From the NCBI GenBank assembly GCA_037379345.1, contig CM074514.1, positions 52,390,001-52,454,000 on the forward strand: a DNA stretch of 64,000 nt, in the 5' to 3' direction. The notes under the pieces were generated by a model that made no database searches, was not told the DNA's origin, and saw nothing but the letters and a program-made list of their open reading frames with translations. Each line of letters starts with the position of its first letter. The first letter of the stretch is position 1. Below are positions 1-52,905 of this stretch, piece by piece. The position numbers and the translations under genes are program-made. Source of the stretch: Perna viridis. Its lineage: Eukaryota.

Positions 1-526
1 TAATCACTTTCTTAGAATGAACAGAATTTAGTGTTTTGCTCTAAAGTACATTGCAATTCCATGGTTGTGCAGTAACTTCGTGATAATCGCATGCATTATT
101 CTTAGATTTAGATTTTTCTTTGTGTTTGATTGTAATGTTACTGGTGAAAAGATACCCTTGATATATGTGTACAGCTTATCAACATTTGAATTGTTCATAT
201 GATTCACATTTGTCATTTTTTTTACATTCGTATATAATACTTAAATCTCGTTTTTGTAATAAAAAAACTTTTGTTATATTTTCCCATAAGCGTTATATTA
301 TTAATTCCCCTATGTAATCCCATAGGACTCTGCATGGAGTCATCTTCCGCAATGTCAAGTATATCCTTTAACACTTATAAAGTATTTCCTGAAATAAAAA
401 CGAGGGCAATGGGATCATAGCTTATACATCATACGCAAAGTGCACTAGGAAATAGATTTTGATCAAATTTCATTAATTACACAATAATTTCCTTGTGTTG
501 TATTAGAACGATAATATCAAATTAAA

Positions 527-3170
527 ATGGAAAGGATTAGATTTATTTTTTTGTCTTGGTTTGTGTGTGTTTGTTTTCATTGTAAGTATCATCTCTTAAT
601 AAATATATAGCTATTAACAAACAAAGACGGTACACCACGAATTTAAAAAAAAAGATTTTTTATAGAATTGTATACTTTCTTGAATTGCAAAGAAAAGAAT
701 ACTTTATATAGATAAAATAAATATACCATCCTATTACATTAATTGATATTTGTTTTTACTAGGTGTGCATATATCTGGTTCAAAGACAGATTGGATTTCA
801 TATCGTGGTATGTCATTGTAAGAAAAAGTGAAACTTACAACATATGTGAATTCTAAGAACAATAGTTAAACTTGTTCAGAGTTTCATTATTAGATAAACA
901 TTATACACATGTGACCAGCATTACTGTAGATAAATATTACAAACATGACCAGCATTACTGTAGATAAACATTACAAACATGACCAGCATTACTGATGAGA
1001 GATTTTACAGAAAGTTGCAACAATTGAAATTACTTTTATTTTACCAAATCGCAAAATCTCCAAATATTTTCAATGCACAGTATAAATGTATTGTTATATG
1101 AAAAGTTTTCCTTTCGATAAAGTTGAGCTAATTAAACGGTCAAAATATCCAACAGAACTAAACAAATGCTTAAAATGCTTAGTGATATTGAATTAATCCA
1201 TAGTCTAAATATGTACGCGTTTTACTTTCTAATAGACAAATTTTATTGTTTCTAGACTTGATTTAAAAAATTCAGAAATAAATTTGACAAATGACACAAT
1301 CAAAATTGATTTGATATTTGATAAAATTGCAACATGCAATGTATTATTACTAAAATTTGATGCCTCCATACCCTTCCATCAAAATTTTATTTTGTTAGAT
1401 GGTGTATGTACTTATGAAATACATTACATGAAAATAGTTTGTTTTTGGGAGAAAGCGGAATTTACCTTTATCTAACAATTAAAATAAATCTGGATATTTT
1501 CTATGAAATTTCTCCATTTCCAAAAAGAAAACTCAATGTAATGACATCATAATTACGTCATTTCATCACGGTGAAGAAAACTGGTTTTCATAGAAACGGG
1601 TTTACAATTTTTCTTGTTTATTATAATCAAATCGTTCGATGAAGAACAAACCAAATTTTTGGGTCGAATTTGGCTGTTTCAGTCCACCTTTTCACTTAAG
1701 AAAAAATGTGTGTTACTATATAGAAGTATTTGTTTGTTTTAAACGACATTTGCGAATGTTGTAATTTATTTTTCTTTACAAGAAAGTTACCAAATTACAT
1801 ATATCTTTGGGACTAAACAAACTCTTAACGACACTGTTCTTCTAATAAATTGTATTTGCATATAAATATATTCCTTGATTCGAACATTTTTTTCTAGGTT
1901 GCTTCGGGGGTTTGAAAAACGATAATACTAAAATGAAACGTCATGAGATATTGTCAAATCAACCAAGTCTTTGTTCAAAATACTGTAAGAGTTATAAGCG
2001 TTTCGCGTTGGTGGTAAGTATGTAAAGCTACAACAAAATAGAAAGATTCGTCTTGTAAAATTGCGACTTATTATTCAATTGTTTTTGGATTATCTAGTTA
2101 TATGTATAATTGCAAAGGTTTTTTAATCTTTATGAAAGTTTTTTTTCTGACTATTAAACTCTGGCTTTGATAAACCTGTATTTCTTTAAGCACTGCTTGA
2201 CCTAAGAATCTTGCAAATAAAGAAAATAGGTGACATGTCAATTTTTGTGTGAAATTTCACATACGAGTCGAATTTAATGTTCGGATAGATGAGATTAGTC
2301 GAGACAGTTTATTTGAATAATAGAGAATTGATATTGTGAATATGTCAGAGAGACGTTAACCTTACTGGGATAAGAAAAAATGTCAGCTTAATGGCATTCA
2401 GTAGTCTTCAATAAAGGACGAGGAAACCCTCTCACTACAGGGCAGGCTGCAGCTATTGTACAGCGTACAAGTATAGCGAAATAGTTGAATTCTACAAAAA
2501 AAAATTTTCCATATGCTATTCGAAACAGACTAATATATAACACTATTTTTACTAGGTTCTTTTAATCCAAACAAATTACAATACACATCATTTTTTTACT
2601 AAGGCATAACCAGTTGTTTTTAGAACACTATATAGGCTTAGCAAGTAAAGACTTTTCTATAAAAAAAATTCTAAATCTTATCAAACAAATCGTACTTATA
2701 AACATTTAATATCGATATGCTATTTTTCATGAGTGGATTCTTTAGTCCTAAGACATTGTATTTGATATGTTTCACATGATTGTCTTACAAAACGTACGGC
2801 AGACATAAATTGATGTTTGTTTTATGTTCTTATGATTATTCAATTAGGATTGTGATTAAATATTTATCCACTGCTATCGCTCGGGATAAAACCAATGCGA
2901 CATAAATAGCCAGCCCGTAGTAAAACAATGATAAAAGGGAGTTTCCGTGATTTATTTCTTAATTCTGTACATAAATTCTAGTTCGTCGCTTACAATGGAA
3001 TCATTCTTGCAACCACCGATGCTGGTAATATCGAATAATATCAGATAGACACAGGACATACACACAAGTTTTAATTGATAAACCATATTCAATTTAAGGA
3101 ATGCCAAATTTTCCTAAAACATAATAATAATGTTTGTTTTACATGTCTCTTTTTAAAACTCGTGGTTTGG

Positions 3171-3214
<44 letters not shown>

Positions 3215-6200
3215 ATTTTATTTTCACTTATTTATTATTCATATATTCTGTACTGTTTTGACTACTGATTTTACAGATTTTTACTGGTGGCAATTTTATG
3301 CTGCTCATTTGTATGTGTTTAAATATATCGGAAATAATGAAGTCTGGTGTAACTCATCTTTCGTTTTAGAATTCCTTTACCCAGTCAGGACCATTGCGGT
3401 AGTCTTACACTTTACCCTGACATTCACATTTGTTGAACGGATTTTCTTTTTTTACTACTGCATAGATTTTATCATTATTAACCCTCATTTCAGAATAGTA
3501 CTTGCTATTGCTTTAATGATGTCGTTTATAATAAATTTCCTCGGAACAGCTGTTTTGCAAAATGTCCAGATTTTTCAAAGAAAATGTATTGTGGTTCAGA
3601 AGATGGGAATTCAGGAAGCGTGTACGAAAGGCACCCTGGTAAACTTGTCTTTTTATTTCTTTAATTCTGATTTCTATTTCACTTTTGACTTATGAAAGTT
3701 GGTTTTGTACACCATTATTAACTTTATAAGCAATCAATCAGGACATGCCATTAAGTGCAAGCCGTTTCTTTTTCTGTCTTGGTATTTGATAACTTGGGCT
3801 TTGGTCTCAGTATTGTTTCTCAAAGTTTTCTTTAGAAAAAAAAGATTTATTTTTATTTTTAAGTGTCAAAGAAAAACTTATTCAAAGAATCCCCTTTTAA
3901 GAAATAAAGCTTGTTTTAATTGTAATGTTTCAGATTTGATACTCAATGGATCGTCTGACTGTCTTGCTGTTCGGTGTTTTAATCACACAGTTTTACACGA
4001 ATCAGTGGAATGCAGTACGAGACTTCAATATGCTTGCTTAAAAACAAGTAGGTGCACCTGAAAAACACAATCTCTTCCAAAGATAACCGTTTTCTAATTT
4101 TCTACATATAATTTCGCTAACTTGTAGACTATTTTAAAACTTCCAAAAGGCACGAGTACCGTCATTTCAAATTCGCGAACGTGTTTACGATCTTCTGCAC
4201 TATTTTGCATTAATAGACGTAGTCTATTACCGAGAATGGCAGTTGTGTAAACGTTTGAAATAGCGGATATACTTTATGTGGAAGTGATTTTTATTAACGA
4301 TGATTATCGTCAATTACGTCTATATTTACTTATTTTAATTTTGAAACAATTGTACGAAAAAAAAACAGATATTGTGAAACAAAACAAATGCACCATCGTA
4401 TAACCGTATTATCAAAAGGTCTTCAATAAGTGTAAACACACCTTCAAGTAAACTCTGAAAGGCCCCGACAACAAAAGTAATAAAATTCACAGGAACATTA
4501 CGATGGCACTCTTTCAAAATAAACTAAATTGTCATATAACGAAATGAAGACACATTACACTTTTTTATAATTCAATTTTCGTAGTACTGATTGAGTTGAC
4601 CATAACAAATCTGGGATGTAAGTTTTATGCATGAAAATAGAACTGATTTTGTCTTTATAATTGTCTTCTGAATGTTATTGCAGGGCCTTCTGAACGAAGA
4701 TCATTTTACGAGGCGAAACTTTTGTGCGAAAACGGATTTAGTAGACTATATGCTTATGGTGAAATCAAATGTCCAAACATTAATAACGCCACGAAATATT
4801 GGGTTGGAACATTCAGATCTTCGAAAGGTACAAATAGCAAACGCGCTAAATAAGAAGTACTATCTTCTAAAAAAAGACGCAGTAAAATTTAGTTCTAAGT
4901 TTCTACGTTTCTTTCAAGAAAACAACACATTTTTTTCGAACGTAATTTCAAATTTTCGATACCGTTTTTCGAACGTCACTAATTAGCAGCATTTGGCCAA
5001 TCGAGAAGCATAATTGCGATCAGGTGATTTTCGTTTTCATAGAAGGGCGTCCTTAAGGTCATAGGGTAAATGCAACCTTCATCATGAAAGCATTGTAATG
5101 AACAAACATCTTAGCAAAACAATGTTCCTATTTTGATAAATGCAAATTCTTATCTATACTTTTGGACTTTTTGTTTTATTCTCCGCCGATGTTTCTGGAC
5201 AAGCAGAGGACACTTACTCATCCGGTGCACCTGGTCCATGCTCCCAGTTTTTAGTGGAATCCGAGTTGCTCATTTACTTTTGTTACTTTGTATGTATTAT
5301 TGTATTTATTATATGTTCTTGGTTGTGTTTTTTTCCATGTTTGGTCTTTGTCCCTGGACTACATTCTTTTTATTTCCTCTAGAATCTTGGTTCCCTTGAC
5401 AACTCCTTCAAAGTTGAATTGTCTTTAAACCATGTTGCTTCAACAGCTGAATAAGTTGGGCTTTTTTTATTAGCAAATGCAGTACCTGCCACGGAAACGA
5501 CACCTTCGACGTCGACATTAAAACGAATTACGACGAGTGAGAAAAGCAGACAATATACAGCAACCACTGTTAAAATTTCGAAGACTGATGTGACAAGGAA
5601 CAAATTAAAATTGACGATGCACACATCAACAACCAATAATGTCGATTTAGAAACAACTGTGCAAACGACAATGAGAACTGATTTGGAAACCATTAATGAC
5701 AATTCTGAAATATCTGAAGCTATGAAAGGATTGAACGATGAACAGACCTTTAAATGTGGTTTATATTGCATGGGTAAGTGCTTCTCAAATGACAGCAGTG
5801 ATTAAATTAATTACGTGACATCACGTCAACCATTTAACCGGTTTAAAACCCCATCCTTTTTCAATTTGTTCTATTTCATGTATTTTGGGGGACAATTGAA
5901 AAAAACAGCCTGGAAACTCCTTTTTCCTTAATTCATTCCTTCTGCTGTCTGTGTTGCTACAAATTATGCCTTAAAGAAGTAATGCTTCATTTTATAGAGA
6001 TTTATCTAGCAAATGAATTATGATTCATATATGATTCAGGAATAACTTCTCTAACCACAATATTCTAAGCACATGCAAAAACAGAAATATAAGAAATAAA
6101 TGTATAAATTACCTTTAATAACGTCAAAATAAAACCCTTAATTATCATTTCTATATGTAATTTTTTTTCTTTTTAAGCTTTGACAATTCTTGTCTCTGTA

Positions 6201-7902
6201 ATAAGCATACTGATTCTATTGGTCTGTTTGTTTCAACTACGTCAACAGTGGTGAGTTTTTTTTTCTTTTTGTTTATGTATTGTTTTGTTTTGTTTTTGTT
6301 TTGTTTTGTGTTTTTGTTTTCTTTCTTTTTTGTCGTAGCACGTTAGCTCACGAATTGCCTTTATTTAGATAATAACTTACTCTTATGGACTGTTTTATTT
6401 GTAATACAGTATAAAACATTTTGGATTATGGTTAACGGTATTTGATATTTCAAAGAATAAACACTGTGGTAAAAATAGTTATTTATTTTACTCAGTGAAA
6501 TGTCAAGTATGTATGCACATGACGGAATGAGAAATATAAAACTAGTTATGGCCATAGTCTTCATTTTAGGTACAAACTTACGAAACAAAATCAGGACATA
6601 TCAGATGGAAGCAATAAAAAAGGTCATGATAAATGTTTAGATAATACAAAACATGATAATCTTCCAATATATCTTGATCCTAATTTACAAAAGGCCGTCT
6701 TCCATAAAAAGAACACTTCTGAAAGAAGGAAAATGGCGCATGAACATCACGTGTATGATCAATGCAAGATGTATTCCACAACTGAGACGTCAAAGTCTAA
6801 ATCCACGAGGCCTTCTTCTAGTTATCAGTCACTAAAGTTAACACCAAAACAAAAGGACGAACTGACAGACAGCTTTAAAAAGTTAAAATCTAGAACGGAA
6901 GCCTTCAATGACGAAGTAAAAAATAAATCTCGGTGTTATGACATCCCTATCAATGAGTTTAAGGACCCCAATTATGCAAAACCTTGGGGCAAAAAGGTTA
7001 ACTCGGATGACAAAAGTAAAGATGAAAACGACGGCGCAAACTATGCAGATCCTTGGTCCAATGATCCAGAATCAGATGACGAAACAAAAGAATCCACCCG
7101 GACGGCTAGATACTTGATGAAAAAATTACGTAGCACCGGAATTTTTAATCCTAAAAAAACTCACTGCCAAGAACCCTACGAAGAAACAGAAATAGATGTC
7201 CGTCGATTCGTATATGACAAACCTACCTGTAAACCGGAAGTAATGGGGGAAAAAGAACAATGGAAAAATTATAGATACCAACCAAAGAGTCAAGAAGGAA
7301 CCTCAGTGTTGACTCCTGGAAGAGGATTGAGTGTTGTAAACCACCCCTCAATTCACAGGAGTGCAACCTTTACAAAGACGCCACAAAATCCACCGGACCT
7401 CATATTGCATGATTCAAATTGTTCAGAAGAGCCGTCTGTGTCAGGAAACGATGAACAGTTGGAGGGGAAATTAAAAACAAAAAAGAAAACAAAGAGAAAA
7501 AAAGTAATGCAAAGATTATCACGTTTCTCTTTGAAGTCAACGATTTTTTCCACAGGGAAAAGACCACATTCAGAAGCTGAAGTTGAACATGTGTATGAAA
7601 CCCCTAACCCTATAGGCCGATCTGCGGCAAATACTAGGTCATTGCTGGTTAATCCGGAAAGCATTGGTCTTAGACCATTACAACAGTCTCAGTACCGGTT
7701 TCAACGTGATCATCGATCTAATTACGAATTGGCAAGACCTATCGTTGTTGAGGGAGAAACTACGCAGGAACTCGATCGACGAATGCCGACAGCACCCAGA
7801 TTAAATAATATCTATGCTGTTGCACAGCCAATTACTAGTTCAAGTAGCATACAAGAAGAAACCAATGAGACAAGACCTATTTATTTTGAACCAGTAGTTT
7901 GA
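527..7902 (+). CDS. Type I transmembrane receptor-like protein: signal peptide, WSC domain, C-type-lectin-like module, Thr-rich stalk, TM, Tyr-motif-rich cytoplasmic tail (774 aa, 9 exons)
   Basis: Exons 527-581, 763-807, 1898-2013, 3494-3638, 3934-4047, 4684-4827, 5474-5773, 6178-6250, 6570-7902, all GT-AG and phase-compatible, 2325 nt total. Starts MERIRFIFLSWFVCVCFHCVHISG (signal peptide); 8-Cys WSC pattern YRGCF..C..YC..FAL..CYC..C..KC..YCG..SVY; TM ALTILVSVISILILLVCLF; last exon contains the 6733-7902 ORF in frame. Confidence 0.88.
891..994. repeat. Three-copy tandem repeat, ~34-bp unit
   Basis: Unit TAGATAAACATTACAAACATGACCAGCATTACTG repeated three times with small variations, intronic. 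Confidence 0.85.
3174..3210. repeat. (TA)n microsatellite
   Basis: Uninterrupted TA run inside a dispersed repeat (about 3130-3300) that also occurs inverted near 58370-58520. Confidence 0.95.
4868..5070 (+). repeat. Dispersed repeat, second copy at about 20005-20222
   Basis: Shared blocks GCAGTAAAATTT, TTTTTCGAACG.CACTAA, TTTGGCCAATCG, CGATCAGGTGA and AAGGTCA.AGGGTAAA in both places. Confidence 0.7.
5181..5402 (+). mobile_element. 3' terminal fragment of a Naiad-like Penelope retroelement
   Basis: Same GCAGAGGA..CCGGTGCACCTGGTCCATGCTCCCAGTTTTTAGTGGA.TCCGAGTT block and T-rich tail as the copies that follow RT-thumb coding sequence at 22920, 24299 and 43563. Confidence 0.7.
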
Positions 7903-8264
7903 TTGGTGTAACTATTTACCTACACGTCTCTATAGGAATCAGGCTTTTGTCGAAAAAACGAAGGAACGTTCCTGTCAGTCCATCACCTGTGCGGCAATGT
8001 ATTTTCTTCGAAAGACATCTTCACTTTAATTGATCGGTAGATAGATTGATTACTTGAGTGTGGTTTATGTCCTGTAACGGATATTAAATTAATGAAAGTC
8101 TTAAAATTTTCAATGTTATATTAGAAAACTATCTAATTTGCAGGAGATTGTTTATTTAAAGTGCATTTCAGATATTATACCTTGTGTCGCTTTTTTATCT
8201 TAATGTGCATGATTCTTATTTTCATTTTTCCACTGTACTTCAGTAGTCAACATACCCTGCAAAT

Positions 8265-8501
8265 ACAATATGTAACAATGTAAATATCATTTGTACATAC
8301 GTAACACTATGAATATCATATGCACACATGTACCAGCGTTGAATACCATATGTACACATGTACCAGCGTTGAATAACATGTACACATGTACCAGTGTGAC
8401 TGGCATATGTACACGTGTACAACTGTGAATGTCATAAGTACACATGTACCAGTGTGAATGTCATATATACACCCGGAACACTCTGCATGTCATATGTACG
8501 C
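8265..8501. repeat. Degenerate minisatellite, ~29-bp unit
   Basis: Repeated TGTACACATGTACCAG(C/T)GT..A.T..CATA units downstream of the receptor stop codon. Confidence 0.8.
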
Positions 8502-8893
8502 AAGAATTCGATTTAATTGAATTGCATAGATTTAATAGTCAATCGCTCAATCAATTTGTCCAATGCACCTTATCCCGTTTTTGATTTGATAATCTGTTCG
8601 AACAATCGTTTTCCTTCGAACTTGACAAACAAGAATTATTGTAACACTTTATAAATAGTACAGCCAAGTACTGTACGCAAAGCTTACCTGATGTCTTTTT
8701 TCCTGATCTTCAGTTTTTATTTGTAATATATTTTATTCGGACCGCTGCATTGTGTTTGTACTGGTCATGTATTTGGATCTTGACGTATTTGAATTGTACC
8801 ATTGTACACGCTTCGGTTTGTTATGATATGACTCACCCCATATATGAAATACATGTCGTAATATCAAGTGGCTGTGATAAGTACTGTAGACAA

Positions 8894-9231
8894 ACGAACA
8901 GATGGACGGACAGCATGATCACTATGTACCACTTGCAAAGAAAAGTTGGTATAAAAATGGAATCAAGTAGTCAAGTAGTTTCCTAAGTAGCAAATAAAGA
9001 AAAAATCAGGGTATAGTCATGTCCAAATCATTGTACATGGTAAGAAATTATGCTGTTAATATTGTTTCTCGTTCGAACAGATGGACGGACAACATGATCA
9101 CTATATACCACTTGCAAAGAGCAGTAGTTATAAAAATAGAATCAAGTAGTTTCCTGAAAAGCAAATTAAAAAAAATCAGGGTACAGTAATGTCCAAATCA
9201 TTGTAAAATACAAGGTAAGAAATATTGTTGT
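8894..9231. repeat. Diverged direct duplication of about 170 bp
   Basis: CGAACAGATGGACGGACA.CATGATCACTAT.TACCACTTGCAAAG...GTCCAAATCATTGTA occurs at about 8894 and 9074. Confidence 0.8.
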
Positions 9232-23372: not shown

Positions 23373-25864
23373 AAGCAAGTGTCTTTCACGTAGCCGTCTT
23401 TTGCAGTTTCGGACTTCCACCTTCCATGTCTTTTAAGAAGTCTATCGGATATTCCAAAAGTACAAACTGCGGTAGCTCCACCGGTACGTAAACTGTGTAA
23501 CCCATAAGATTTAATGTTTGTAACAAACGGTGAAAAGGCTTCTATGAATAGTCATTCTAGTATACGAAAGCGGCTTATTACCCTTTCGGAAAATGAAATG
23601 ATCTTTACATTTCGTAAAATTACGGAACAAATGAATAGTTATTCTAAATAAATTCCATTCTAAATAAATTTCTAAATTTTTTATAAGGCACAATTTATAT
23701 CCGGTTCTAACAATAATATTCTACCGCCGTATCTGTATATATCGGTCTTACTCTTCTGTATAAAAACGGACATATAACTTTGAAAAAATAGAATATCACA
23801 TGATTGAATGTTTAACAATTCGGAAACTCGTAAAAATCGGGAATATGCTAATAAACAGGCACAAATGGTACGTTGTATATATAAATTTTAATCACAAAAC
23901 ATTTTATCGTACATTTTAGATAGAATCTCTGGAGTGATAGGCTCTTTTTTCTTTATCGAAACTGATAAACGCCTCTTTGCGCCTTCAAGAATATTTTTCA
24001 CTAAATTAGAATCTGTTGGAGAAGAAATACTAGCAATATTATGTGGCCATCTAATACTATAAAAAGTTTGATTGATAGGGCTGGGTGAAGCCCTTTATGA
24101 ACTAAACAGGCTAAATATAAAGCAACATAAATTTGGTTTAGCCGGTAAAATAAATCAATGGAAATTCCGTTTGTCCTTTTTATTGGAAAATTTGTCATTT
24201 TCATATGTAAAAATCAGTAAAAATCGTAAATAATGTCCTAGCACCACCACCCTTTTTCTGGAGAACCAGGCTGGCACACCTCCTTCTCCTTTACGCATTC
24301 TTTTTATATCGCGCTAGAATTCTAACAAATAAGCTTTTGGAACAGGGTTATGTTGCTACAAGATTGAAGTCATCACTACTTAAGTTTTATGGTCGTCATC
24401 ATGAACTCTCGAGGGTCGTTATGGTGTATCCATCTGCGCCATGAAAACTGATTTATTCAACGTGTCATAGTTTTCCTTTCCTCGTTTCTCTACCCCGCAC
24501 TTGACTTTATATGAGCAACTCGGCGGGTGTTTCTAGAAAAGCAGAGGATGCTTATTCTACCGGTGCACCTGGTCCATGCTCCCAGTTTTTAGTGGAGTCC
24601 GAGTTGTTCATTTGCTTTTGTTACTTTGTATGTTTGATTTTAGTTAAGTCATGTTTTTGTTGTGTTTGTTTGTTTTCCTTGTCTGTTCATTGTCCCTCCA
24701 TTACATTCTTTTGATTACCGCTATAACCCTGGTTCACTTGATTATTCTTCAAAGTGTCTTTCACGTAGCCGTCTTTTGCAGTTTCGGCTAAATATAAAGC
24801 AACATAAATTTGGTTTAGCCGGTAAAATAAATCAGTGGAAATTCCGTTTGACAAAGCCCATTTTTTCCATCTTAAAAAGCCATCATAATAATTTTGAACT
24901 GTATTGATCGATTTACATTCCATCAATAATCCAGGAAGTAGTGAATTTTTTCCACAAGAGAAGCGGGCAATTGCGAAAAATCACTCTGGAAAGCCTGAAA
25001 AAACATATGTAAAAACAAAATAACATTACTACAAAAAAACATAAAAATGAAAACTTCAAAATGTCATACTCTGTCATTATAACTAACATACTGTTCATTT
25101 TATACAATATAACTACCAACCCTGCCTACATGAGGAACATATCCCACCACCACTACAAACTATATCGAAAAGGGGTACCGTAATTATATGCTAAAGAAAC
25201 CATCACCTTGTAAAGGAATCCATATATGTTAGTACCAAATTCCATTTTACAGCCAATACCCTAAAAGGCAGATCAATATTTCCAAATACCGATTTGTTAC
25301 CTTTACCAATAGTATAGTTTTTCTTTGTTAGTTGGAAAATCAATACACCCCAACGGCTTTAATAAACCCTTCACCAGTAGGGCATAAAATTGGCCAATAA
25401 TTTGCCGATTTCCACAATGGAAAAATAACTGTTCCATGTGCCATACATTGTTTCATATAGCGTAATACTCTCGCTACTAAACCAATAGGAGGTACAAACC
25501 GTCCATTTACACCGTTCCAGTCTATAGTAAATGCATCGATGCACATCGAGTTGACCGTCCGGTAACAGGAATAAAATACTGGTAATTTGTGATTATGATC
25601 ATTTGCAAACCAGTCTATCTCATGCGGACCCCATATAGATTCCAAATAATCAAAGATTCCATGAACGACACCCCAATCGTCGTAATCGTCGACTGATATA
25701 ATCAGCTTTGTCGTTATTAGTTCTAGGGACCCATTCCACATGAATAGAAATGTTATTATGTACACAGTTCTAAAAAATACACAATGCAATATCCTGTAAT
25801 TCAGGCTTCATGCTACCTTTAGCGACAATGCTTACTACATTCTGATTGTCCGAAAACCATTTAA

Positions 25865-26299
25865 GGTAGGAAACACAATTAATTTCGTAATTTCAACAGA
25901 CCCATCTTGACATATAAAAAAATCCACCGCTTCAAACTCAATAAAACTTCAAGAATATGGAAACGTGTATAAAAGCAGATTTCTATAAGAGTGCCAGAAA
26001 AATTCACCATCATTTTTTATTTTTAGCAACTTTGCTCCGGAGACCCCGTAGACATGAAAAGTGACCACTGCCAAATGCCCTAAATTTTGACCTACTTTCA
26101 TAGGACCAAATCACAACTTCCACATAAAATTACAGAATGAAAAAAATTCCCTTGTAAATTTGATCCTTGCCCTACATTTCTGCAGTAAATACTAAGCAAT
26201 AAAGTTTATGGCAGCAAAGAAAAAAAATCAGGAAGAAACACACTGAAAAAAAGGAACTATATTCGAAAAGTCAAGGGGAATTAATTGTGATCTCGTACC
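25865..26299. mobile_element. Solo terminal-repeat unit of a KolobokP-like transposon
   Basis: 435 bp, TIR GGTAGGAAACACAATTAATT / AATTAATTGTGATCTCGTACC, TTAA duplicated on both sides. Removing it restores DIRS RNase H KHIKWFSDNQ. Shares motifs with the 440-bp repeats at 28453 and 30191. Confidence 0.8.
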
Positions 26300-28140
26300 T
26301 TAATGTGTTTATCTTGCAATATATTGATCATCGACTCAAGAATATGTTTAACAGCGGTGAATTCTTTCCAAGTAGAACTCTTACTCGATTACCATTCAGA
26401 CCATGTACCATGTGCAATATCGTTGGGTGTTTCTACAATATAACCACCATATCCAGTATCACTCGCATCACTATAAACAATAGATTGAATTGATAAATCT
26501 GAAGTAAATTGTTTACATACAGTTAACCAACGTTAACCAACGTTAAGTTACATTTCCAAAAATTGATTTGGTGTAAACTATTTTCGGTCAAATCGATACA
26601 ACTGTTCCACGAGGTTTTACCTAAAATGTCAATGCTTATATATTTGGTCATGTTATAAGCTACATTCCCGATAACGTAGGCCATAGATACTATTTGTCCG
26701 ACCAAAGATGCAACTGATCTGGAATGCACTGTACGATATTATTGTAATGTAAAACTTAATATTATCAATAGTTGTAAGAACTTGTTTGATTCTATCATCA
26801 GGTTTATAATACATTTGTCTGTGTTAATAGAATATCCCAAAAAAGTAAAATGTTGAACTGGTGACCATTTAGATTATTCGTTTTTAGGAACAAAACCACT
26901 CATAATCAAATCTTGCTTTACTTGTTCTGACATAGCCCTGCATACTTCAACATCCGTATGCGTACCTAAACCATCATCTAGATACTTTAACACCTGCTTC
27001 CCTTCACCTCGCCATTTTTTATGAGTGGTCTGGTTATCTTATTGAATATGTAACATGCAGAACTTACGCCAAATGGAAGTACTAATAATTTACACCACTT
27101 TATATTGTTACCTTGGTTCCCTTGATTACTCTTCCATGAGAAACCTAGACAATCTGTATGAGGAATATAAATGTTTATGTGGTGATAGGCTGATACAATA
27201 TCAGACTAAAACAGAAAGAATTATTAGTAATAAATTCCATCGCTATGCAAATATCTTCCAATTTAATACTGGTCTTCCAAAGATGTTTTGTTAACGTGTC
27301 TAAGGCCTAAAATCAAACGTTTCTTTCTACTGTCCGATTCAGAAACAGTTAGTGGATTAACAACGTATGGTTGATTGTCACATTCTTCAATTAATACACT
27401 AACCAAAAGATCATGACTACCTTCGGTAACAAACTCGTTAAGGATGATCGCCGATCGATTGTTTTTTAAACAAAGGGACGGTGGGGTACTGTAAAAGGGA
27501 ATTCTGTAGCCGTTTAAAATAGTGTCCAATATAAAATCATATCATCCAATACTTTCCCATTTTCAATCTATCCTTAACAATAATATTACCCTGGCCTTGT
27601 TCATATTTATAATAATCACGAGTAAGATTATCGGAATAGTTATTAAATTGCTCAGTTTTCGTATCAAAATCTGTTGTAATTAAACTATACTTATCTTGTA
27701 TGAATTCCGTCTTATTGTGGTTTTGGCATGACTGGTCTTGGGTTGAATTGACACTGATATTCCCAGTGTTGAATGGATCCACATCCATAGCATGCTCCTT
27801 GTTGCTGACCTCTACGCTGATGTCCGCTCCTGCTGGGCATGGGTTGTCCATGGTACAAGGCAGGTTCACGAAAGGGCTGATTTTTGACTGGAAAAGTAGC
27901 AATAAATTGAGAAGAAGCATTTTGACCTGTATTATTCGGCTTAGCAGCAGCCTTTTTACCCTTTGAATTACGTTTGCGTAAAGCTCTGTTTTCTGTTTTG
28001 TTAATCTTACTTTCATCGTCGGAATCGCTAGCGACTGGATTGCTCTCATATTGCCCCACAGTTTCCCATCCCCCTTCACTACCATCGGCAATCTTAATAT
28101 GGTTATTGCGTTTCTTAATCTTTTCAATAACCTCAGTTAT

Positions 28141-30730
28141 TCCCGACTTGTGGACCAACATTTTGTCAACATTTATCTCCCTGTGGAGCAGGTATCTATT
28201 TGGAACACGTAAGGTTTTCCATCCGATATCGACGATACTTTAGAAAATTCCGAAAGTCAAAAGGGAATTTCTCGTTCTACTGACCCTGCTATAAATTTTC
28301 TTTACCCGGGATACCAATGAAAATAATCCTTATGTTACCTACCAACAAAATGAAACACCCTGCAAATTTTAGAAACACCGTTGTGTTTGTCTGCTGGGGA
28401 TTCCATTTTCATTCGAGTTACCTCTTTTTTCTGCACCCGAATCCGAACATCGGGCACGAGACCGCAATTAATTTTCAAGTGCATTTCAATATACACATGT
28501 GAGCAGATTAAAAAAATTCCACCGGCGCAAACTGAATAAAACTTCTCTGGCCTAAAGATATATACAAACAGAATTTTATATATATATTGTAGAAAATTTT
28601 ACCGTCATTTTCTGAAATTAATACATATAATTCGAAGATGGGGTAAACATGACAAATGAACTGAGTTAAAAGTCCTAAATTTTAACATTCTTCCACTGAA
28701 CCAAATCACAACTTTTAGTCAGAATTGATTAATGAAAAAAAATCCCTTGTAATTTTAACCTATTTTCTACCAATTAGAGGCAAAACTTCAGCAAATAAGT
28801 TTCCAGTAAAAATATGAAAAAATGTGGAAGGTACCTACTACCAAAGTTGGAACTATATTCGTACCAAGGGGAATTAATTGTGTTCTCGTACCTATTAGAT
28901 CAATAAATGTGCCCAATTTGAATAAAAACTGCACTCATGTCAAGATGAACCTTTTTTGACTTCAAGTACAAAGTTTCATCATGATTAGTTGAAAAATATA
29001 TAAGTTATAGCAAATTTAGTATCAGTGGTACATTGCATGACTTGCATGTCCAATGGTCGAAGGAAATAAGGCCCCTCTAAAATGTACATCTTTTTTTTTA
29101 AATGAAATATTTTTGTGATTTTTTACATTGGTTGCATCATATTATGTGTATCTGATGCAATAAAGTTCAGTTTACTCAAGTTCCAGCTGCTTTAAGGCCA
29201 AAAATTGGGTTTTTATACATGCGGCCATGGTCAATGCACTTTTAGACCATGTGTAGGGGTACACATATAAAAACTCATTTTATGATGCTGACAATGACTT
29301 ACATTGATCAACGTCAAACATAAAGTGGTCTACACATATCTAATGTTCATTGAAAACAATAAGAAGTGGTTTCAAAGCTAAAACTGTCACTCCAGATCAA
29401 TTTAAACCAGACCTGTACAGAGCTTGTTCAAGTGCGATTGTGTCCGATATTAAAAGTTAGCCTTTATTTGGGTTTTGAATGATGAAAAGTCTGAAACAAA
29501 TGTAAGATAATGTAGGGTTCTAAGTTTATCAGGTACATAAGCAGACAGTCAGCTGTATTTTTCCAGTTTTTCTACAAAAAATTTCATTTTTGACACCTTA
29601 TAGTGTATGCGGAACTCTAAAATTAGGTGTTTTTGAGACATCACAAGGTATATACATGTAGTGACTTACATTAGATGCATGAATATCAATGGAATGAATA
29701 TATTAGTTTTTTTCACATTATTTATATTATTTACTAGCAAATACAAAAGATTCAGACCAATAAAACACATATCTGTGATTTTATAGATCCTAAGACAAGG
29801 CTGTGAAAACCCCTGATTTTGCCATATTTCATTGACTGGGTTCATAAAAATTACACTAAATTGTCAGATTTCTGCCTAAACCTTGTTCATAAAGTATGTT
29901 TTTTGTTGATTTGATGTTCCTAGTGTATAGTTAGAGGAGAAAAACTCAACGCTGTACAATATTTTCCCCACTGGTCTATATTTCATACCTAGCACCTTAG
30001 CAAAAGTGCAATTTCAATGGAAAATCCCATAGAAACCATATTTTTTATTTTAATTTCAGAAAATAGAGAATAAAGGGCCAAAATCTTATTATTTCATGTA
30101 GATTTACTGAATTCTTGAAAATAAACACCAAATTACCCCCAGCAAATACTAGCAAATACAATTTCTGATACCCTGGCAACCCCCTTATCAGGCACGAGAC
30201 CGCAATTAATTTTCAAGTGCATTTCAATATACACATTTGAGCAGATTAAAAAAATTCCACCGGCGCAAACTGAATAAAACTTCTCTGGCCTAAAGATATA
30301 TACAAACAGAATTTTATATATATATTGTAGAAAATTTTACCGTCATTTTCTGAAATTAATACATATAATTCGAAGATGGGGTAAACACGACAAATGAACT
30401 GAGTTAAAAGTCCTAAATTTTAACATTCTTCCACTGAACCAAATCACAACTTTTAGTCAGAATTGATTAATGAAAAAAAATCCCTTGTAATTTTAACCTA
30501 TTTTCTACCAATTAGAGGCAAAACTTCAGCAAATAAGTTTCCAGTAAAAATATGAAAAAATGTGGAAGGTACCTACTACCAAAGTTGGAACTATATTCGT
30601 ACCAAGGGGAATTAATTTTGTTCTCGTACCATCGATTAGAGAGACTTCGAAATTATACCTGCTCTTACGGGAGGTAACTCTGCAAAAACAGGATAAAATA
30701 TGGCTGTATCCCGAGCTCCACAAGTAGGGA
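28141..30730. mobile_element. ~410-bp MITE split by a KolobokP-like insertion; uninterrupted copies at 45004-45408 (inverted) and 57945-58354
   Basis: TIR TCCC(G/T)ACTTGTGGA; halves 28141-28452 and 30635-30730 join into the sequence seen in the other two copies. Confidence 0.85.
28453..30630. mobile_element. Non-autonomous KolobokP-like DNA transposon with 440-bp long terminal direct repeats
   Basis: Direct repeats 28453-28892 and 30191-30630 (about 3 differences by eye), each bounded by GG(C/T)ACGAGA..AATTAATT TIRs; 4-bp TSD ATCG; non-coding interior. Confidence 0.85.
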
Positions 30731-37984: not shown

Positions 37985-39556
37985 ATGGAGTTATGTCCCC
38001 TTCTGCCGGATTTATTGATTGAGATATTTTCTTACTTGCCTCAAACCGATAAACAAAAACTTTACAAAGTAAGTAGTCACCCTTCGTGGAGGGAAGACAT
38101 ATGGTTAGCACCAAAGTTGTGGAGATATGTTTCGTTTACCTATTATGACAATTCATCTGATTATCAGGAAAAAAAGGCTGATTTTCCAGAGTTCTTATCA
38201 CTGATACCTCACACTCATAGTCATATACAGGAATTAAATTTGGATGAATATCAATTCAAAGATATAATTGAAACAAATCCCGAATTAGAGTTTGAAAGGT
38301 TGAAGAGCTTCAAAATTCACATCAATGGAAAATCAATGAACGCTAGGATTTTGTGCAAAAATATAATTAGAGCCTTTCCTATGTTAGATGATATTCATTT
38401 ACTAATACTTGATTTCGTCGGAGCAGACGCAAGTTTTTTTCGCTGTTTGTCGGCTTTACGGTTGAAAAAGCTTACACTATTCAACTGTAGACACTATCGA
38501 AGAGAAGTGAAGTACTTTGACGAGAGCGTCAGGCATATTTTAACATCTCAGCCAGATTTGACAGAGCTTTCACTTTTTACGTATGACAAAATGGAATCAC
38601 TTACGCTACACTACGTTTTCAAATATTGTAGAATGTTGAAGATGTTTTCATTTTCTGCTCCTGCGGGTCTTTCAAATGACGTGTTTGAGCCAGCTTTTAC
38701 TCCACTTTTACTTGAAAAAGTCAAGCTGGCTTCTTGCAATGAAATAGACAACAATTTTTTGCTTAATCTTGGTAAACGATCACAGAATCTCACAAGTTTT
38801 ACTATCTACCAGTGTAATGAAGTGACGTCACAGGGCATTATGCATTTGACACAGTTTTGTCCCGAATTACATGAGATAGCTATAGAATATTATTATTCGG
38901 ATCCTTTGGGTAGCGAAGGATTGTGTTATATATGGAAGAGCTGTCGAGAACTACGGAAATTCAAATACCGACAAGCCGTTGATATCACAGACTCTGATAT
39001 GGTTTCATTTGCTCAGGCCTGTGTCCAACTCAGAGAGCTCACTTTGTACGATTGTCCTCTAATGTCTGATATAGCTTTGGTCGAAATTGCGAGGTGCTGC
39101 AAATTATTAACAGTTGTTGAGCTATGGCATTCAAAAGCGATCACATTGTTTGGAGTTTTGACCATGATTCTAGAAGCGAAACAACTAAAAAAGCTTATTT
39201 TAGATGGATCTGCTCGAGTGCTTGACATACCAGAGTTAGGAACGGAGCCGGAAGTGGGAGATACCTCGTGGGAATCAAGTGTAATCCGCTCAGCAAGGAA
39301 AAGAATGCAAGAAAACGTGGGAAAAATAAACATGCAACATTCTTCTCCCCTTACTCGTTTATATATTGAAAGTGAGAAGTGCAATGCAAAGTTTGATACA
39401 GTGCTATCGATTGCTAAATTGTGTCCCAATATCCGAAAATTGTCCATACCTCGGTTTTTCTTTGGAGGTTTAAGCAAAGCTTGTTATAAACAGCTGAAAT
39501 CATTGTGTAAAGTCCTAGAATCAGTATCATTAGAAATGCAATACATTGAGGTTTGA
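37985..39556 (+). CDS. F-box/leucine-rich-repeat protein (FBXL-like), intronless CDS, 523 aa
   Basis: N-terminal F-box LLPDLLIEIFSYL..KVS..W....LW and Cys-containing LRRs (LTSFTIYQCNEVTSQGI, LRELTLYDCPLMSDIALVEIARCC). An acceptor TAACAG about 35 nt upstream suggests a 5' UTR intron. Confidence 0.9.
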   Translation: MELCPLLPDLLIEIFSYLPQTDKQKLYKVSSHPSWREDIWLAPKLWRYVSFTYYDNSSDYQEKKADFPEFLSLIPHTHSHIQELNLDEYQFKDIIETNPELEFERLKSFKIHINGKSMNARILCKNIIRAFPMLDDIHLLILDFVGADASFFRCLSALRLKKLTLFNCRHYRREVKYFDESVRHILTSQPDLTELSLFTYDKMESLTLHYVFKYCRMLKMFSFSAPAGLSNDVFEPAFTPLLLEKVKLASCNEIDNNFLLNLGKRSQNLTSFTIYQCNEVTSQGIMHLTQFCPELHEIAIEYYYSDPLGSEGLCYIWKSCRELRKFKYRQAVDITDSDMVSFAQACVQLRELTLYDCPLMSDIALVEIARCCKLLTVVELWHSKAITLFGVLTMILEAKQLKKLILDGSARVLDIPELGTEPEVGDTSWESSVIRSARKRMQENVGKINMQHSSPLTRLYIESEKCNAKFDTVLSIAKLCPNIRKLSIPRFFFGGLSKACYKQLKSLCKVLESVSLEMQYIEV

Positions 39557-51336: not shown

Positions 51337-52905
51337 ATTGAGTCGTGTCCCCTTCTGCCGGATTTATTGATTGAGATATTTTCTTACTTGCCTCAAACCG
51401 ATAAACAAAAACTTTACAAAGTAAGTAGTCACCCTTCGTGGAGGGAAGACATATGGTTAGCACCAAAGTTGTGGAGATATGTTTCGTTTACCTATTATGA
51501 CAATTCATCTGATTATAATGGAGAAAAACGCTGATTTTCCCGAGTTCTTATCACTGATACCTCACACTCATAGTCATATACATGAGTTAAATTTGGATGA
51601 ATATCAATTTAAAGAAATAATTGGAACAAATCCCGAATTAGAGTTCGAAAGTTTGAAGAGCTTCAAAATTCACATTAATGGAAAATCAATGAACCCTAGG
51701 AAAATATAGTTAGAGCCTTTCCTATGTTAGAAGATATTCATTTACTGACACTTGATTTCGTCGAAGCAGACGCAAGTTTTTTTCGCTGTCTGTCGGCTTT
51801 ACGGTTGAAAAAGCTTACATTGTTCAACTGTAGACCCGATCGAAGAGAAGTGAAGTACTTTGACGAGAGCGTCAGGCATATGTTAACATCTCTGCCTAAT
51901 TTGACAGAGCTTTCACTTTTTACTTGTGACAAAATGGATTCACTTACGTTACAATACGTTTTCAAATATTGTAGAATGTTGAAGACGTATTCGTTTTCTG
52001 CTCCAACGGGTCTTTCAAATGACGCGTTCGAGTCGGAATTCACGCCGCTTTTACTCGAAGAAGTAAAGATAGCTACTTGCAACGATATGGACGACACGTT
52101 CTTATTTAATCTTGCTAAACGATCACAGAATCTCACGAACTTTACTATGGACCAATGTAATGAAGTGACGTCACAGGACATTATGTATTTAACGCAGTTT
52201 TGTCGAAATTTACATGAAATAGCCTTAAAATATTATAACTGGGATATTTTTGGTAGCGAAGGAATAGGTTATACATGTACATCAAAGATCTGTCGAAAAC
52301 TACAGAAGTTCCAATGCCGACAAGCTGTTGATATCACAGGATCTGACATGATTTCATTCGCTCAGGCCTGTGTCCAGCTCAGAGAACTCACGTTACATCA
52401 TTGTGCTCTAATTACGGATACAGTTTTGGTCGAAATCACACAAAAAAATGCAAATTTATAATAGTTGTTCAGCTGTCGCATTCAAAAGCGATCACATTGT
52501 TTGTGGTTTTGATCATTGTTCTAGAAGGGAAACAAATGAAAAGGCTGCTTTTTCAAGGGTCTTCTCGAGTGCATGACGTACCTGGTTTAGGAACGGAACC
52601 GGAAGTGGAAGATACCACGTGGGAATCTAGCGTTATTCGATCAGCAAGGAAACAAATGCAAGAAAATGTGGATTAAAAGAAAATGCATCATTCTTCTGCC
52701 CTTACTCGTTTATACATTGAGGCTGAAAAGTGCAAAGCAAAGTTTGATGCAGTACAGTTGATTGCTAAATTGTGTCCCAGTATCCGGAAATTGTCGATAC
52801 GTCGGTTTTTCTTTGGTGGTTTAGGCAGATTGTTATAAACAGCTTAAGTCATTTTGTATTTTCCTAGAGTCTGTATCACTCGAAGGGAAGTACATTCAGT
52901 TTTGA
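51337..52905 (+). pseudogene. Pseudogene paralogue of the F-box/LRR gene
   Basis: Full-length colinear similarity to 37985-39556; ATG changed to ATT (51337), frameshifts near 51517, 51700, 52445 and 52828, premature TAA at 52674. Upstream 50930-51320 also matches 37572-37955. Confidence 0.9.

What the first reader, a model, noticed from the sequence alone, without database searches (positions are those of the whole stretch)
3934..4827. Apparent circularly permuted C-type-lectin-like domain fused behind a WSC domain
Seen: exon 3934-4047 encodes DCLAVRC..ESVECSTRLQYAC, and the next exon 4684-4827 encodes SFYEAKLLC..SRL..KYWVG. Known: canonical CTLDs run alpha1 (x-x-A-x-x-x-C), then WIG, then C..C..C, and their termini lie close together. 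Inference: the two halves are swapped, with the chain opened in the long loop that normally binds Ca2+ and sugar, and a glycan-binding WSC domain attached at the new N-terminus. Both exons are symmetric phase 1-1, fitting exon shuffling or collapse of a tandem array. Standard CTLD profiles could miss such a fold.
Basis: partly seen in the sequence, partly recalled or inferred. Interest (0 to 1): 0.8.

Follow-up and report, generated by a model that had tools for sequence, protein, structure and literature searches.

The report
Possible order-swapped lectin-like module, mussel receptor
A single-copy green-mussel gene for a surface membrane protein carries, behind a WSC sugar-binding domain, two small exons that weakly resemble the back and then the front of a C-type lectin domain; the exon order is real, but whether they fold into a rearranged lectin domain is unproven.

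Summary
Exons 3934-4047 and 4684-4827 (+ strand, both phase 1-1) encode the quoted peptides. Spliced RNA-type contigs from three studies join exon 4>5>6>7 directly, with no extra exon. One 3.6-kb contig carries exons 4 to 9.

The gene (527-7902) has nine exons and is single-copy in Perna viridis. It encodes a type I membrane protein: signal peptide, WSC, an 85-residue six-cysteine module, a Thr-rich stalk, a TM helix and a 443-residue tail.

The circular-permutation reading is only partly supported.
- Pfam Lectin_C misses both exons, yet finds 9 of 10 equal-sized pieces cut from genuine mussel CTLDs.
- With filters off, a CTLD profile built from this genome places exon 5 on beta3-beta5 with three cysteines aligned (7 bits; 1 of 5000 shuffles).
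- It places exon 6 on the alpha1 and WIGL positions only weakly (2.9 bits; p 0.01-0.07).
- The long Ca2+/sugar loop, the WND tryptophan, beta1 and most of alpha2 are absent.
- No relatives were found among 1.84 billion representative proteins or elsewhere in the genome.

Best reading (about 0.45): a reduced, order-swapped, CTLD-derived module that does not bind sugar through Ca2+. A true permuted fold has probability about 0.27, and chance resemblance about 0.35.

The parts
527..581 (+). Exon 1: start codon and a hydrophobic signal peptide; ends in phase 1
   Evidence: Read from the sequence. It lay outside the stretch laid with reads. X1 record 1 runs 103 nt upstream of exon 3, which fits exon 2 (45 nt) plus exon 1 (55 nt).
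763..807 (+). Exon 2: short phase 1-1 exon leading into the WSC domain
   Evidence: Splice sites read; not directly covered by laid reads.
1898..2013 (+). Exon 3: N-terminal half of the WSC domain (3 cysteines)
   Evidence: Joint 2013>3494 in X1 and X6. Own-genome WSC profile 7.3 bits on positions 8-41. Pfam blank exon-wise.
3494..3638 (+). Exon 4: C-terminal half of the WSC domain (5 cysteines)
   Evidence: Own-genome WSC profile 20.0 bits, E 3.5e-8, positions 51-92. Joint 3638>3934.
3934..4047 (+). Exon 5, phase 1-1: 38 residues and 4 cysteines. It resembles the CTLD beta3-beta4-beta5 end (DC ... C ... aromatic-x-C).
   Evidence: Translation. Own-genome CTLD profile 7.0 bits on positions 87-116 with three Cys aligned. 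That score is reached by 1 of 5000 shuffles, 0 of 393 real decoy windows and 1 of 482 six-frame pieces. Best pairwise score is 9.6 bits, reached by 1 of 600 shuffles. hhalign P is 0.009. Pfam and PDB are blank.
4684..4827 (+). Exon 6, phase 1-1: 48 residues and 2 cysteines. It resembles the CTLD alpha1 motif and WIGL strand, with a shortened alpha2 region.
   Evidence: Translation. CTLD profile 2.9 bits on the WIGL part. That score is reached by 166 of 5000 shuffles and 3 of 349 decoys. Pairwise alignments are colinear with L007, L018 and L009 and carry a 5-8 residue deletion. Pairwise maximum is 7.7 bits, reached by 41 of 600 shuffles. hhalign P is 0.07 on alpha1. No relatives in 1.84e9 representatives.
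5474..5773 (+). Exon 7: Thr/Ser-rich stalk, probably mucin-like and O-glycosylated
   Evidence: Joint 4827>5474 in X1, X6, X7 and X21. Composition read. An in-frame 3-nt insertion variant at 5591 appears in X6 and X7.
6178..6250 (+). Exon 8: transmembrane helix followed by basic residues
   Evidence: Joint 5773>6178; read.
6570..7902 (+). Exon 9: 443-residue cytoplasmic tail with several Tyr-containing motifs and no known domain; stop codon at 7900-7902
   Evidence: Contigs X1, X6 and X7 run from exon 8 into 6569-7700. Pfam has no family. The only database relative is P0001, the same gene from another individual.

Best explanation
The gene encodes a type I surface glycoprotein of the green mussel Perna viridis. 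From the outside in, it has a WSC domain at the tip, an 85-residue six-cysteine module (exons 5 and 6), a Thr-rich stalk, one transmembrane helix and a long tail carrying tyrosine motifs.

The module is most likely derived from C-type lectin-like domain sequence in swapped order. The last third of a CTLD (beta3-beta5) comes first, and the alpha1-to-WIGL part follows. This is the arrangement found at any junction of two tandem CTLDs, so it could arise if the outer halves of such a pair were lost, or by shuffling of phase 1-1 exons.

The module is heavily reduced. It has no long loop, no EPN/QPD or WND motif, no beta0/beta1 and a truncated alpha2, so it cannot be a Ca2+-dependent sugar binder. 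Inferred, not shown: the four canonical cysteines plus one extra pair let it form a small disulfide-stapled unit that holds the WSC domain on top of the stalk. The whole protein may then work as a surface glycan sensor or adhesion receptor, in the manner of fungal Wsc sensors. Whether the module closes into a permuted CTLD core is open.
For: Exon order and the absence of extra exons are shown by spliced contigs. Exon 5 aligns to CTLD profile positions 87-116 with three cysteines matched, at 7.0 bits. That score is reached by 1 of 5000 shuffles, 0 of 393 real decoys and 1 of 482 six-frame pieces. Its best pairwise score is 9.6 bits against a genuine C-terminal CTLD exon, reached by 1 of 600 shuffles. 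Exon 6's best alignments are colinear with alpha1 and WIGL of genuine CTLDs. WSC-exon controls of similar size and Cys content score lower against CTLDs (at most 3.8 bits pairwise, 1.2 bits on the profile). Exon 3, which belongs to the WSC domain, scores only 7.3 bits on the WSC profile, so about 7 bits can be true homology in this fast-diverging gene. The module has six cysteines, an even number, and all four canonical CTLD cysteine positions are present. CTLDs are hugely expanded in this genome, with 662 first-look candidates, and in bivalves generally (PMC10140915). The two variants seen in the ectodomain exons are both synonymous (3607 and 4685).
Against: Neither exon reaches significance once all domain families are counted. 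Pfam Lectin_C is blank, although 9 of 10 equal-sized pieces of genuine CTLDs score 23-35 bits. PDB phmmer returns no CTLD. Exon 6 is marginal: 166 of 5000 shuffles, 41 of 600 shuffles, and hhalign P 0.07. One non-coding six-frame piece of the same 9 kb scores 7.4 bits. No homologue or paralogue is available to test conservation. AlphaFold2 on exon 5 alone gives helices rather than strands, but that model is a fragment without an alignment at pLDDT 65 and carries little weight.
Confidence: 0.45

Rival explanations
1. True circular permutation. Exons 5 and 6 fold together into a compact CTLD core. Beta5 is joined by a short hairpin to alpha1, the canonical alpha1-beta5 and beta3-loop disulfides are kept, and the chain termini sit where the long loop normally leaves and re-enters the core.
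For: It shares all the sequence evidence of the best explanation. Both partners of each canonical disulfide are present. The extra two cysteines make an even total. The 10-residue linker between the beta5-like Cys and the alpha1-like motif is the right size for a hairpin that could replace beta1. If the gene is CTLD-derived, retention of core motif residues in an otherwise fast-evolving gene is easiest to explain by a retained core. AlphaFold2 on exon 6 alone puts a helix on residues 2-15, the alpha1-like motif, at low confidence.
Against: The fold was not tested. About 40% of a canonical CTLD is missing, including the WND tryptophan of the core and most of alpha2. Exon 6's homology is not significant. 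No relative shows the same arrangement. The exon 5 fragment model is helical (weak evidence). The paper library holds only 8 papers with both 'circular permutation' and 'C-type lectin', and none of the 7 listed has either term in its title or abstract, so the prior is low.
Confidence: 0.27
2. Chance resemblance. Exons 5 and 6 encode a lineage-specific small cysteine-rich module unrelated to CTLDs, and the motifs were picked out after the fact.
For: Pfam and PDB give no hit at E up to 10. Per-test p values of 0.002 (exon 5) and 0.01-0.07 (exon 6) do not survive correction for thousands of families and many exons. A random non-coding piece scores 7.4 bits. The peptide is an orphan: it has no relatives in 1.84e9 representatives, and the only hit, P0002, is a tandem-repeat artefact.
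Against: Two adjacent exons each find their best alignment on complementary parts of the same profile, with four cysteines and WVG in register. The WSC control exons do not behave this way. CTLD is by far the commonest extracellular domain in this genome.
Confidence: 0.35
3. The gene model is incomplete. Other exons complete one or two canonical CTLDs, so there is no permutation.
For: RNA coverage is low (word depth 2-19). X7 record 15 starts 67 nt inside intron 5, which may be an unspliced or alternative form.
Against: Contigs from three studies join 3638>3934, 4047>4684 and 4827>5474 directly, and one contig spans exons 4-9. A filter-free CTLD profile scan of all six frames of 1-9000 finds no further CTLD-like open piece on the + strand in the introns.
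Confidence: 0.03

Closest known systems
C-type lectin-like domain (Pfam Lectin_C PF00059; CTLD superfamily, including compact forms without the long loop such as Link modules)
   Same: Four cysteines sit at the canonical relative positions: the alpha1 Cys, DC in beta3, and the C-x7-C end. There is a WVG strand motif and an aromatic-xx-A-xxx-C helix motif. The small size recalls compact CTLDs.
   Different: The order of the halves is swapped. There is no long loop, EPN/QPD or WND, no beta0/beta1, and alpha2 is cut by 5-8 residues. The module has 85 residues against about 120. It gives no profile hit.
Fungal Wsc1/Slg1-type cell-surface sensors
   Same: The overall architecture matches: signal peptide, N-terminal WSC domain, Ser/Thr-rich stalk, single TM helix and cytoplasmic tail (from established knowledge of the family; the architecture was read here).
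   Different: This is an animal gene with an extra six-cysteine module between WSC and stalk. The tail is much longer and unrelated. No homology beyond the WSC domain was tested.
Polycystin-1 (PKD1) and the sea-urchin REJ proteins
   Same: In polycystin-1 the extracellular region combines a WSC domain with a C-type lectin domain (from memory, not tested here).
   Different: Those CTLDs are canonical in order and length and sit among many other domains. The protein here has one TM helix and none of the PKD, REJ or GPS parts.
Circular permutation by duplication and truncation (for example swaposins versus saposins)
   Same: The C-half then N-half order is what the duplication-truncation route predicts, and the symmetric phase 1-1 exons would allow it.
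   Different: No tandem intermediate, no canonical-order relative and no structure are available here.

Membership tests
CTLD (Lectin_C, PF00059) | Significant match to the family profile | tested here: not met
   No Lectin_C hit for exon 5 or exon 6 at E up to 10. Control pieces of the same extent from genuine P. viridis CTLDs hit in 9 of 10 cases at 23-35 bits. An own-genome profile with filters off gives 7.0 and 2.9 bits, about 10 bits in sum against a cut-off of 22.6.
CTLD (Lectin_C, PF00059) | Four canonical cysteines (alpha1; beta3; after beta4; beta5) with canonical spacing | tested here: met
   The three Cys of exon 5 align to the three C-terminal Cys columns. The first Cys of exon 6 aligns to the alpha1 Cys. 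They occur in swapped order along the chain.
CTLD (Lectin_C, PF00059) | WIGL strand motif | tested here: met
   YWVGT aligns to the WIGL columns.
CTLD (Lectin_C, PF00059) | Canonical order: beta1-alpha1-alpha2-beta2-long loop-beta3-beta4-beta5 | tested here: not met
   The beta3-beta5-like exon precedes the alpha1-beta2-like exon in both genome and transcripts. No beta0/beta1 equivalent is present. The alpha2 region is 5-8 residues short.
CTLD (Lectin_C, PF00059) | Long loop with Ca2+/sugar site (EPN or QPD, WND). This defines sugar-binding C-type lectins, not all CTLDs. | tested here: not met
   No sequence lies between the WVG strand and the stalk, or before the DC motif, that could form the loop. 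The WND columns are occupied by H-E-S.
CTLD (Lectin_C, PF00059) | CTLD three-dimensional fold | not testable with these tools
   Single-exon AlphaFold2 models are low-confidence fragments.
WSC domain (PF01822) | Match to the family profile | tested here: met
   Pfam exon by exon is blank, and the locus is not among the 150 scored genome matches. A WSC profile built from 16 P. viridis WSC sequences gives exon 4 20.0 bits (E 3.5e-8) on positions 51-92 and exon 3 7.3 bits on positions 8-41, colinear. The intron lies in mid-domain, as in many WSC genes of this genome.
WSC domain (PF01822) | Eight cysteines | tested here: met
   Three in exon 3 and five in exon 4, read from the translation.
Circularly permuted domain | Both halves homologous to the parent family, in swapped order | tested here: inconclusive
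   Exon 5 has p about 0.002. Exon 6 has p 0.01-0.07.
Circularly permuted domain | Same fold as the parent under non-sequential structural alignment | not testable with these tools

The most novel reading that the evidence does not exclude
A natural circular permutation of the C-type lectin-like fold. It would be a compact, loop-less CTLD core whose chain starts at beta3 and ends at beta2, keeps both canonical disulfides and sits between a WSC domain and a mucin-like stalk in a mussel surface receptor. It would have arisen from the junction of two tandem CTLDs. As far as the held paper library shows, no permuted CTLD has been described.
Probability: 0.27. Interest if true: 0.75.

Novelty: new variant of a known kind. 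Interest (0 to 1): 0.45.

Why it matters
If the module really is a permuted CTLD, it would be the first natural circular permutation in one of the largest animal extracellular domain superfamilies. It would be caught in a lineage where CTLDs are massively expanded, and it would illustrate the duplication-truncation route through symmetric-phase exons. It would also show that profile-based censuses of bivalve lectins can miss rearranged members. If it is not, the finding is an ordinary lineage-specific membrane glycoprotein with a divergent WSC domain. Its Wsc-sensor-like architecture in an animal is mildly interesting by itself.

Tried and rejected
- Pfam on each exon gave nothing, even for the WSC halves. 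Exon-wise Pfam therefore lacks power for this divergent gene, and controls were added.
- A word search with the 443-residue tail returned only P0001, the same gene from another individual. Its contig L012 is genomic, not spliced, so it gave no reference for the spliced protein.
- The big representative search with exon 6 returned a single hit, P0002, a 9-fold tandem-repeat translation. I rejected it as an artefact.
- PDB sequence searches with exons 5 and 6 returned no CTLD. Glycyl-tRNA synthetase at E 0.6 is noise.
- Own-genome searches for paralogues of exons 4, 5 and 6 and of the tail found none.
- A six-frame CTLD profile scan of 1-9000 for decayed missing halves in the introns found none on the + strand. 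The top hit is a minus-strand piece inside a repeat.
- Intron positions and phases of genuine CTLD half-exons do not coincide with those of exons 5 and 6. Class B N-exons end in phase 1 after W-x-D-G, and most C-exons are terminal. They give no support for a specific donor.
- The ESM Atlas was busy on four tries.
- AlphaFold2 on single exons gave low-confidence fragments and is not informative.
- Earlier scan notes held nothing relevant.
In its place the exon scores were obtained separately and added.
Full report
**Where we are.** The window is G000:C4:52390001-52454000 of a 723-Mb assembly in 46 pieces. The piece lengths are 72,616,575 (C1), 49,738,958 (C7) and 36,560,911 (C13). These equal the largest contig, the N50 and the N90 in Table 1 of the Perna viridis genome paper, which also reports 15 chromosomes plus 31 unanchored contigs (PMC11358141). 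The organism is therefore the Asian green mussel.

**The observation.** Reading 1-9000 gives a nine-exon gene on the + strand.

| Exon | Coordinates | Content |
|---|---|---|
| 1 | 527-581 | start codon, hydrophobic signal peptide |
| 2 | 763-807 | short linker |
| 3 | 1898-2013 | WSC N-terminal half |
| 4 | 3494-3638 | WSC C-terminal half |
| 5 | 3934-4047 | CTLD-end-like piece |
| 6 | 4684-4827 | CTLD-front-like piece |
| 7 | 5474-5773 | Thr-rich stalk |
| 8 | 6178-6250 | TM helix |
| 9 | 6570-7902 | 443-residue tail |

The predicted protein has 774 residues.

I laid four runs on 1800-7700. RNA-type contigs from three studies and single raw RNA-seq reads show GT..AG joints at 2013>3494, 3638>3934, 4047>4684, 4827>5474 and 5773>6178. 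One contig (X6 record 8, 3579 nt) carries exons 4 to 9 contiguously. Exons 1 and 2 lay outside the laid stretch. X1 record 1 extends 103 nt upstream of exon 3, which fits them.

**The WSC domain.** Pfam finds nothing exon by exon, and the locus is not among the 150 scored WSC matches of the genome. I built a WSC profile from 16 P. viridis WSC sequences. On it, exon 4 scores 20.0 bits (E 3.5e-8) on positions 51-92, and exon 3 scores 7.3 bits on positions 8-41, colinear with exon 4. All eight cysteines are present. The domain is split in mid-domain, as in many WSC genes of this genome. The WSC call stands, for a divergent member.

**Is the module CTLD-like?** Standard tools say no.
- Lectin_C is not reported for either exon at E up to 10.
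- phmmer against all PDB chains returns no CTLD.
- The test has power. Pieces of the same extent cut from five genuine P. viridis CTLDs hit Lectin_C in 5 of 5 N-terminal pieces (31-35 bits) and in 4 of 5 C-terminal pieces (23-29 bits).

I then built a CTLD profile from 45, later 83, CTLD exons of this genome and scored each exon separately with all filters off.

*Exon 5* scores 7.0 bits on profile positions 87-116, with D-C, the post-beta4 Cys and the aromatic-x-C end all aligned.
- The score is reached by 1 of 5000 shuffles.
- It is reached by 0 of 393 windows from real WSC, tail, stalk and F-box sequences.
- It is reached by 1 of 482 six-frame pieces of the first 9 kb.
- Its best pairwise match to a genuine C-terminal CTLD exon is 9.6 bits, reached by 1 of 600 shuffles.
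- hhalign gives P 0.009.

*Exon 6* is weaker.
- It scores 2.9 bits on the WIGL columns. That score is reached by 166 of 5000 shuffles and by 3 of 349 decoys.
- hhalign gives P 0.07 on the alpha1 columns.
- Its pairwise maximum is 7.7 bits, reached by 41 of 600 shuffles.
- The pairwise alignments are nevertheless colinear over the whole exon, running from a basic pair and an aromatic through A-xxx-C-E-N and L to Y-W-V-G. They carry a 5-8 residue deletion where alpha2 should be.

The WSC exons, used as controls of similar size and cysteine content, score lower against CTLDs. Exon 3, which belongs to the WSC domain, reaches only 7.3 bits on its own family's profile. A 7-bit score in this gene can therefore be true homology.

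Taken together, the CTLD origin of exon 5 is moderately supported (p about 0.002 per test). That of exon 6 is weakly supported. Neither survives a family-wide correction.

**What is missing.** Against a canonical CTLD the module lacks several parts:
- beta0/beta1; only a 10-residue linker joins the beta5-like Cys to the alpha1-like motif
- most of alpha2
- the entire long loop with its EPN/QPD motif
- the WND tryptophan, whose columns read H-E-S

Whatever the fold, this is not a Ca2+-dependent sugar-binding site. Present are all four canonical cysteine positions, an extra pair (one Cys in each exon), the WVG strand and three N-glycosylation sequons.

**Relatives.** None were found.
- Exons 4, 5 and 6 and the tail have no paralogue in the genome.
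- The tail finds only the same gene from another individual (P0001). Its contig is genomic.
- Exon 6 finds nothing real among 1.84 billion representatives. The single hit, P0002, is a tandem-repeat artefact.

A 47-residue query would miss orthologues below roughly 50% identity, so this shows no close relatives rather than none at all. Polymorphism data are too thin to test selection. The two variants seen in ectodomain exons are synonymous (3607 and 4685), whereas 4 of 5 coding differences in the tail change the residue.

**Structure.** I therefore left out the joined step: folding or scanning exon 5+6 as one chain, and the native-versus-swapped HMM test. No referenced copy of the spliced sequence could be found. 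AlphaFold2 on the single exons gives low-confidence fragments. Exon 6 has a helix on residues 2-15, over the alpha1-like motif, at pLDDT 57. Exon 5 has two helices at pLDDT 65. I give these almost no weight. The ESM Atlas was busy on four tries.

**Reading.** The protein has the layout of a Wsc-type surface sensor: WSC, Ser/Thr stalk, TM helix and tail, with a small disulfide-rich module inserted between WSC and stalk.
- *Best explanation (0.45).* The module is CTLD-derived sequence in swapped order and heavily reduced. It arose from the junction of two tandem CTLDs or by shuffling of phase 1-1 exons, and it now serves as a disulfide-stapled connector rather than a lectin site.
This remains possible.
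- *Chance resemblance (about 0.35).* An orphan cysteine-rich module merely looks like CTLD halves.
- *Incomplete gene model (about 0.03).*

Intron positions of genuine CTLD half-exons in this genome do not match those of exons 5 and 6, so no donor can be named. The held paper library has only 8 papers that contain both 'circular permutation' and 'C-type lectin', and none of the 7 listed carries either term in its title or abstract. Only one of them was opened: it lists segment swapping in the collagen IV NC1 domain under the C-type lectin-like superfamily, which is not a permuted CTLD. CTLD expansion in bivalves is documented (PMC10140915) and is seen here as 662 candidate exons.

**Verdict.** If real, this is a new variant of a known kind. 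Interest is moderate, because the decisive fold and orthologue tests are still to be done.

Noticed in passing
G000:C5:46,698,000-46,847,000 (not in the window): A giant array of WSC half-exons with a period of about 2.77 kb. Exons matching profile positions 1-45 alternate with exons matching 42-82. More than 50 units have identical bit scores. This is either one very long WSC-repeat gene or a very recent tandem amplification.
   Followed up: no
window 5149-5542 (intron 6 of the gene): An interspersed repeat with summed word depth of 16,000-79,000 in RNA-type contigs, with many variant letters and loose ends. It is an abundant, transcribed repeat family. A minus-strand open piece inside it (5278-5343) gave the top chance score (7.4 bits) against the CTLD profile.
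   Followed up: partly
window 6570-7902 versus L012: A genomic Logan contig from another individual differs at 5 coding sites of the tail exon, and 4 of them change the residue. X6 and X7 also carry an in-frame GAC insertion behind 5591 in the stalk exon. The tail and stalk look loosely constrained.
   Followed up: partly
window 37985-39556 (+) and 51724-52461 (+): A 523-residue intronless ORF with an F-box-like start and leucine-rich repeats, plus a partial second copy of 245 residues about 14 kb downstream.
   Followed up: no
window 15614-15967 (-) and 17648-17983 (-): Open pieces that look like exons of a cytochrome P450-type gene, judged by eye from the translations. Not tested.
   Followed up: no
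window 25340-28161 (-): Overlapping long ORFs with retroelement-like content, including a zinc-knuckle-like Cys/His motif in 27712-28161. Probably a decayed transposable element.
   Followed up: no
window 880-1000, 3177-3210, 8270-8480: Short tandem repeats: a unit of about 30 nt near 900-990, a (TA)n run at 3177-3210, and a unit of about 27 nt near 8280-8470 in the 3' UTR region.
   Followed up: no
window 4617-4683: X7 record 15 begins 67 nt inside intron 5 and runs on through exons 6-9. It is an unspliced precursor or an alternative start that would lack WSC and exon 5.
   Followed up: no
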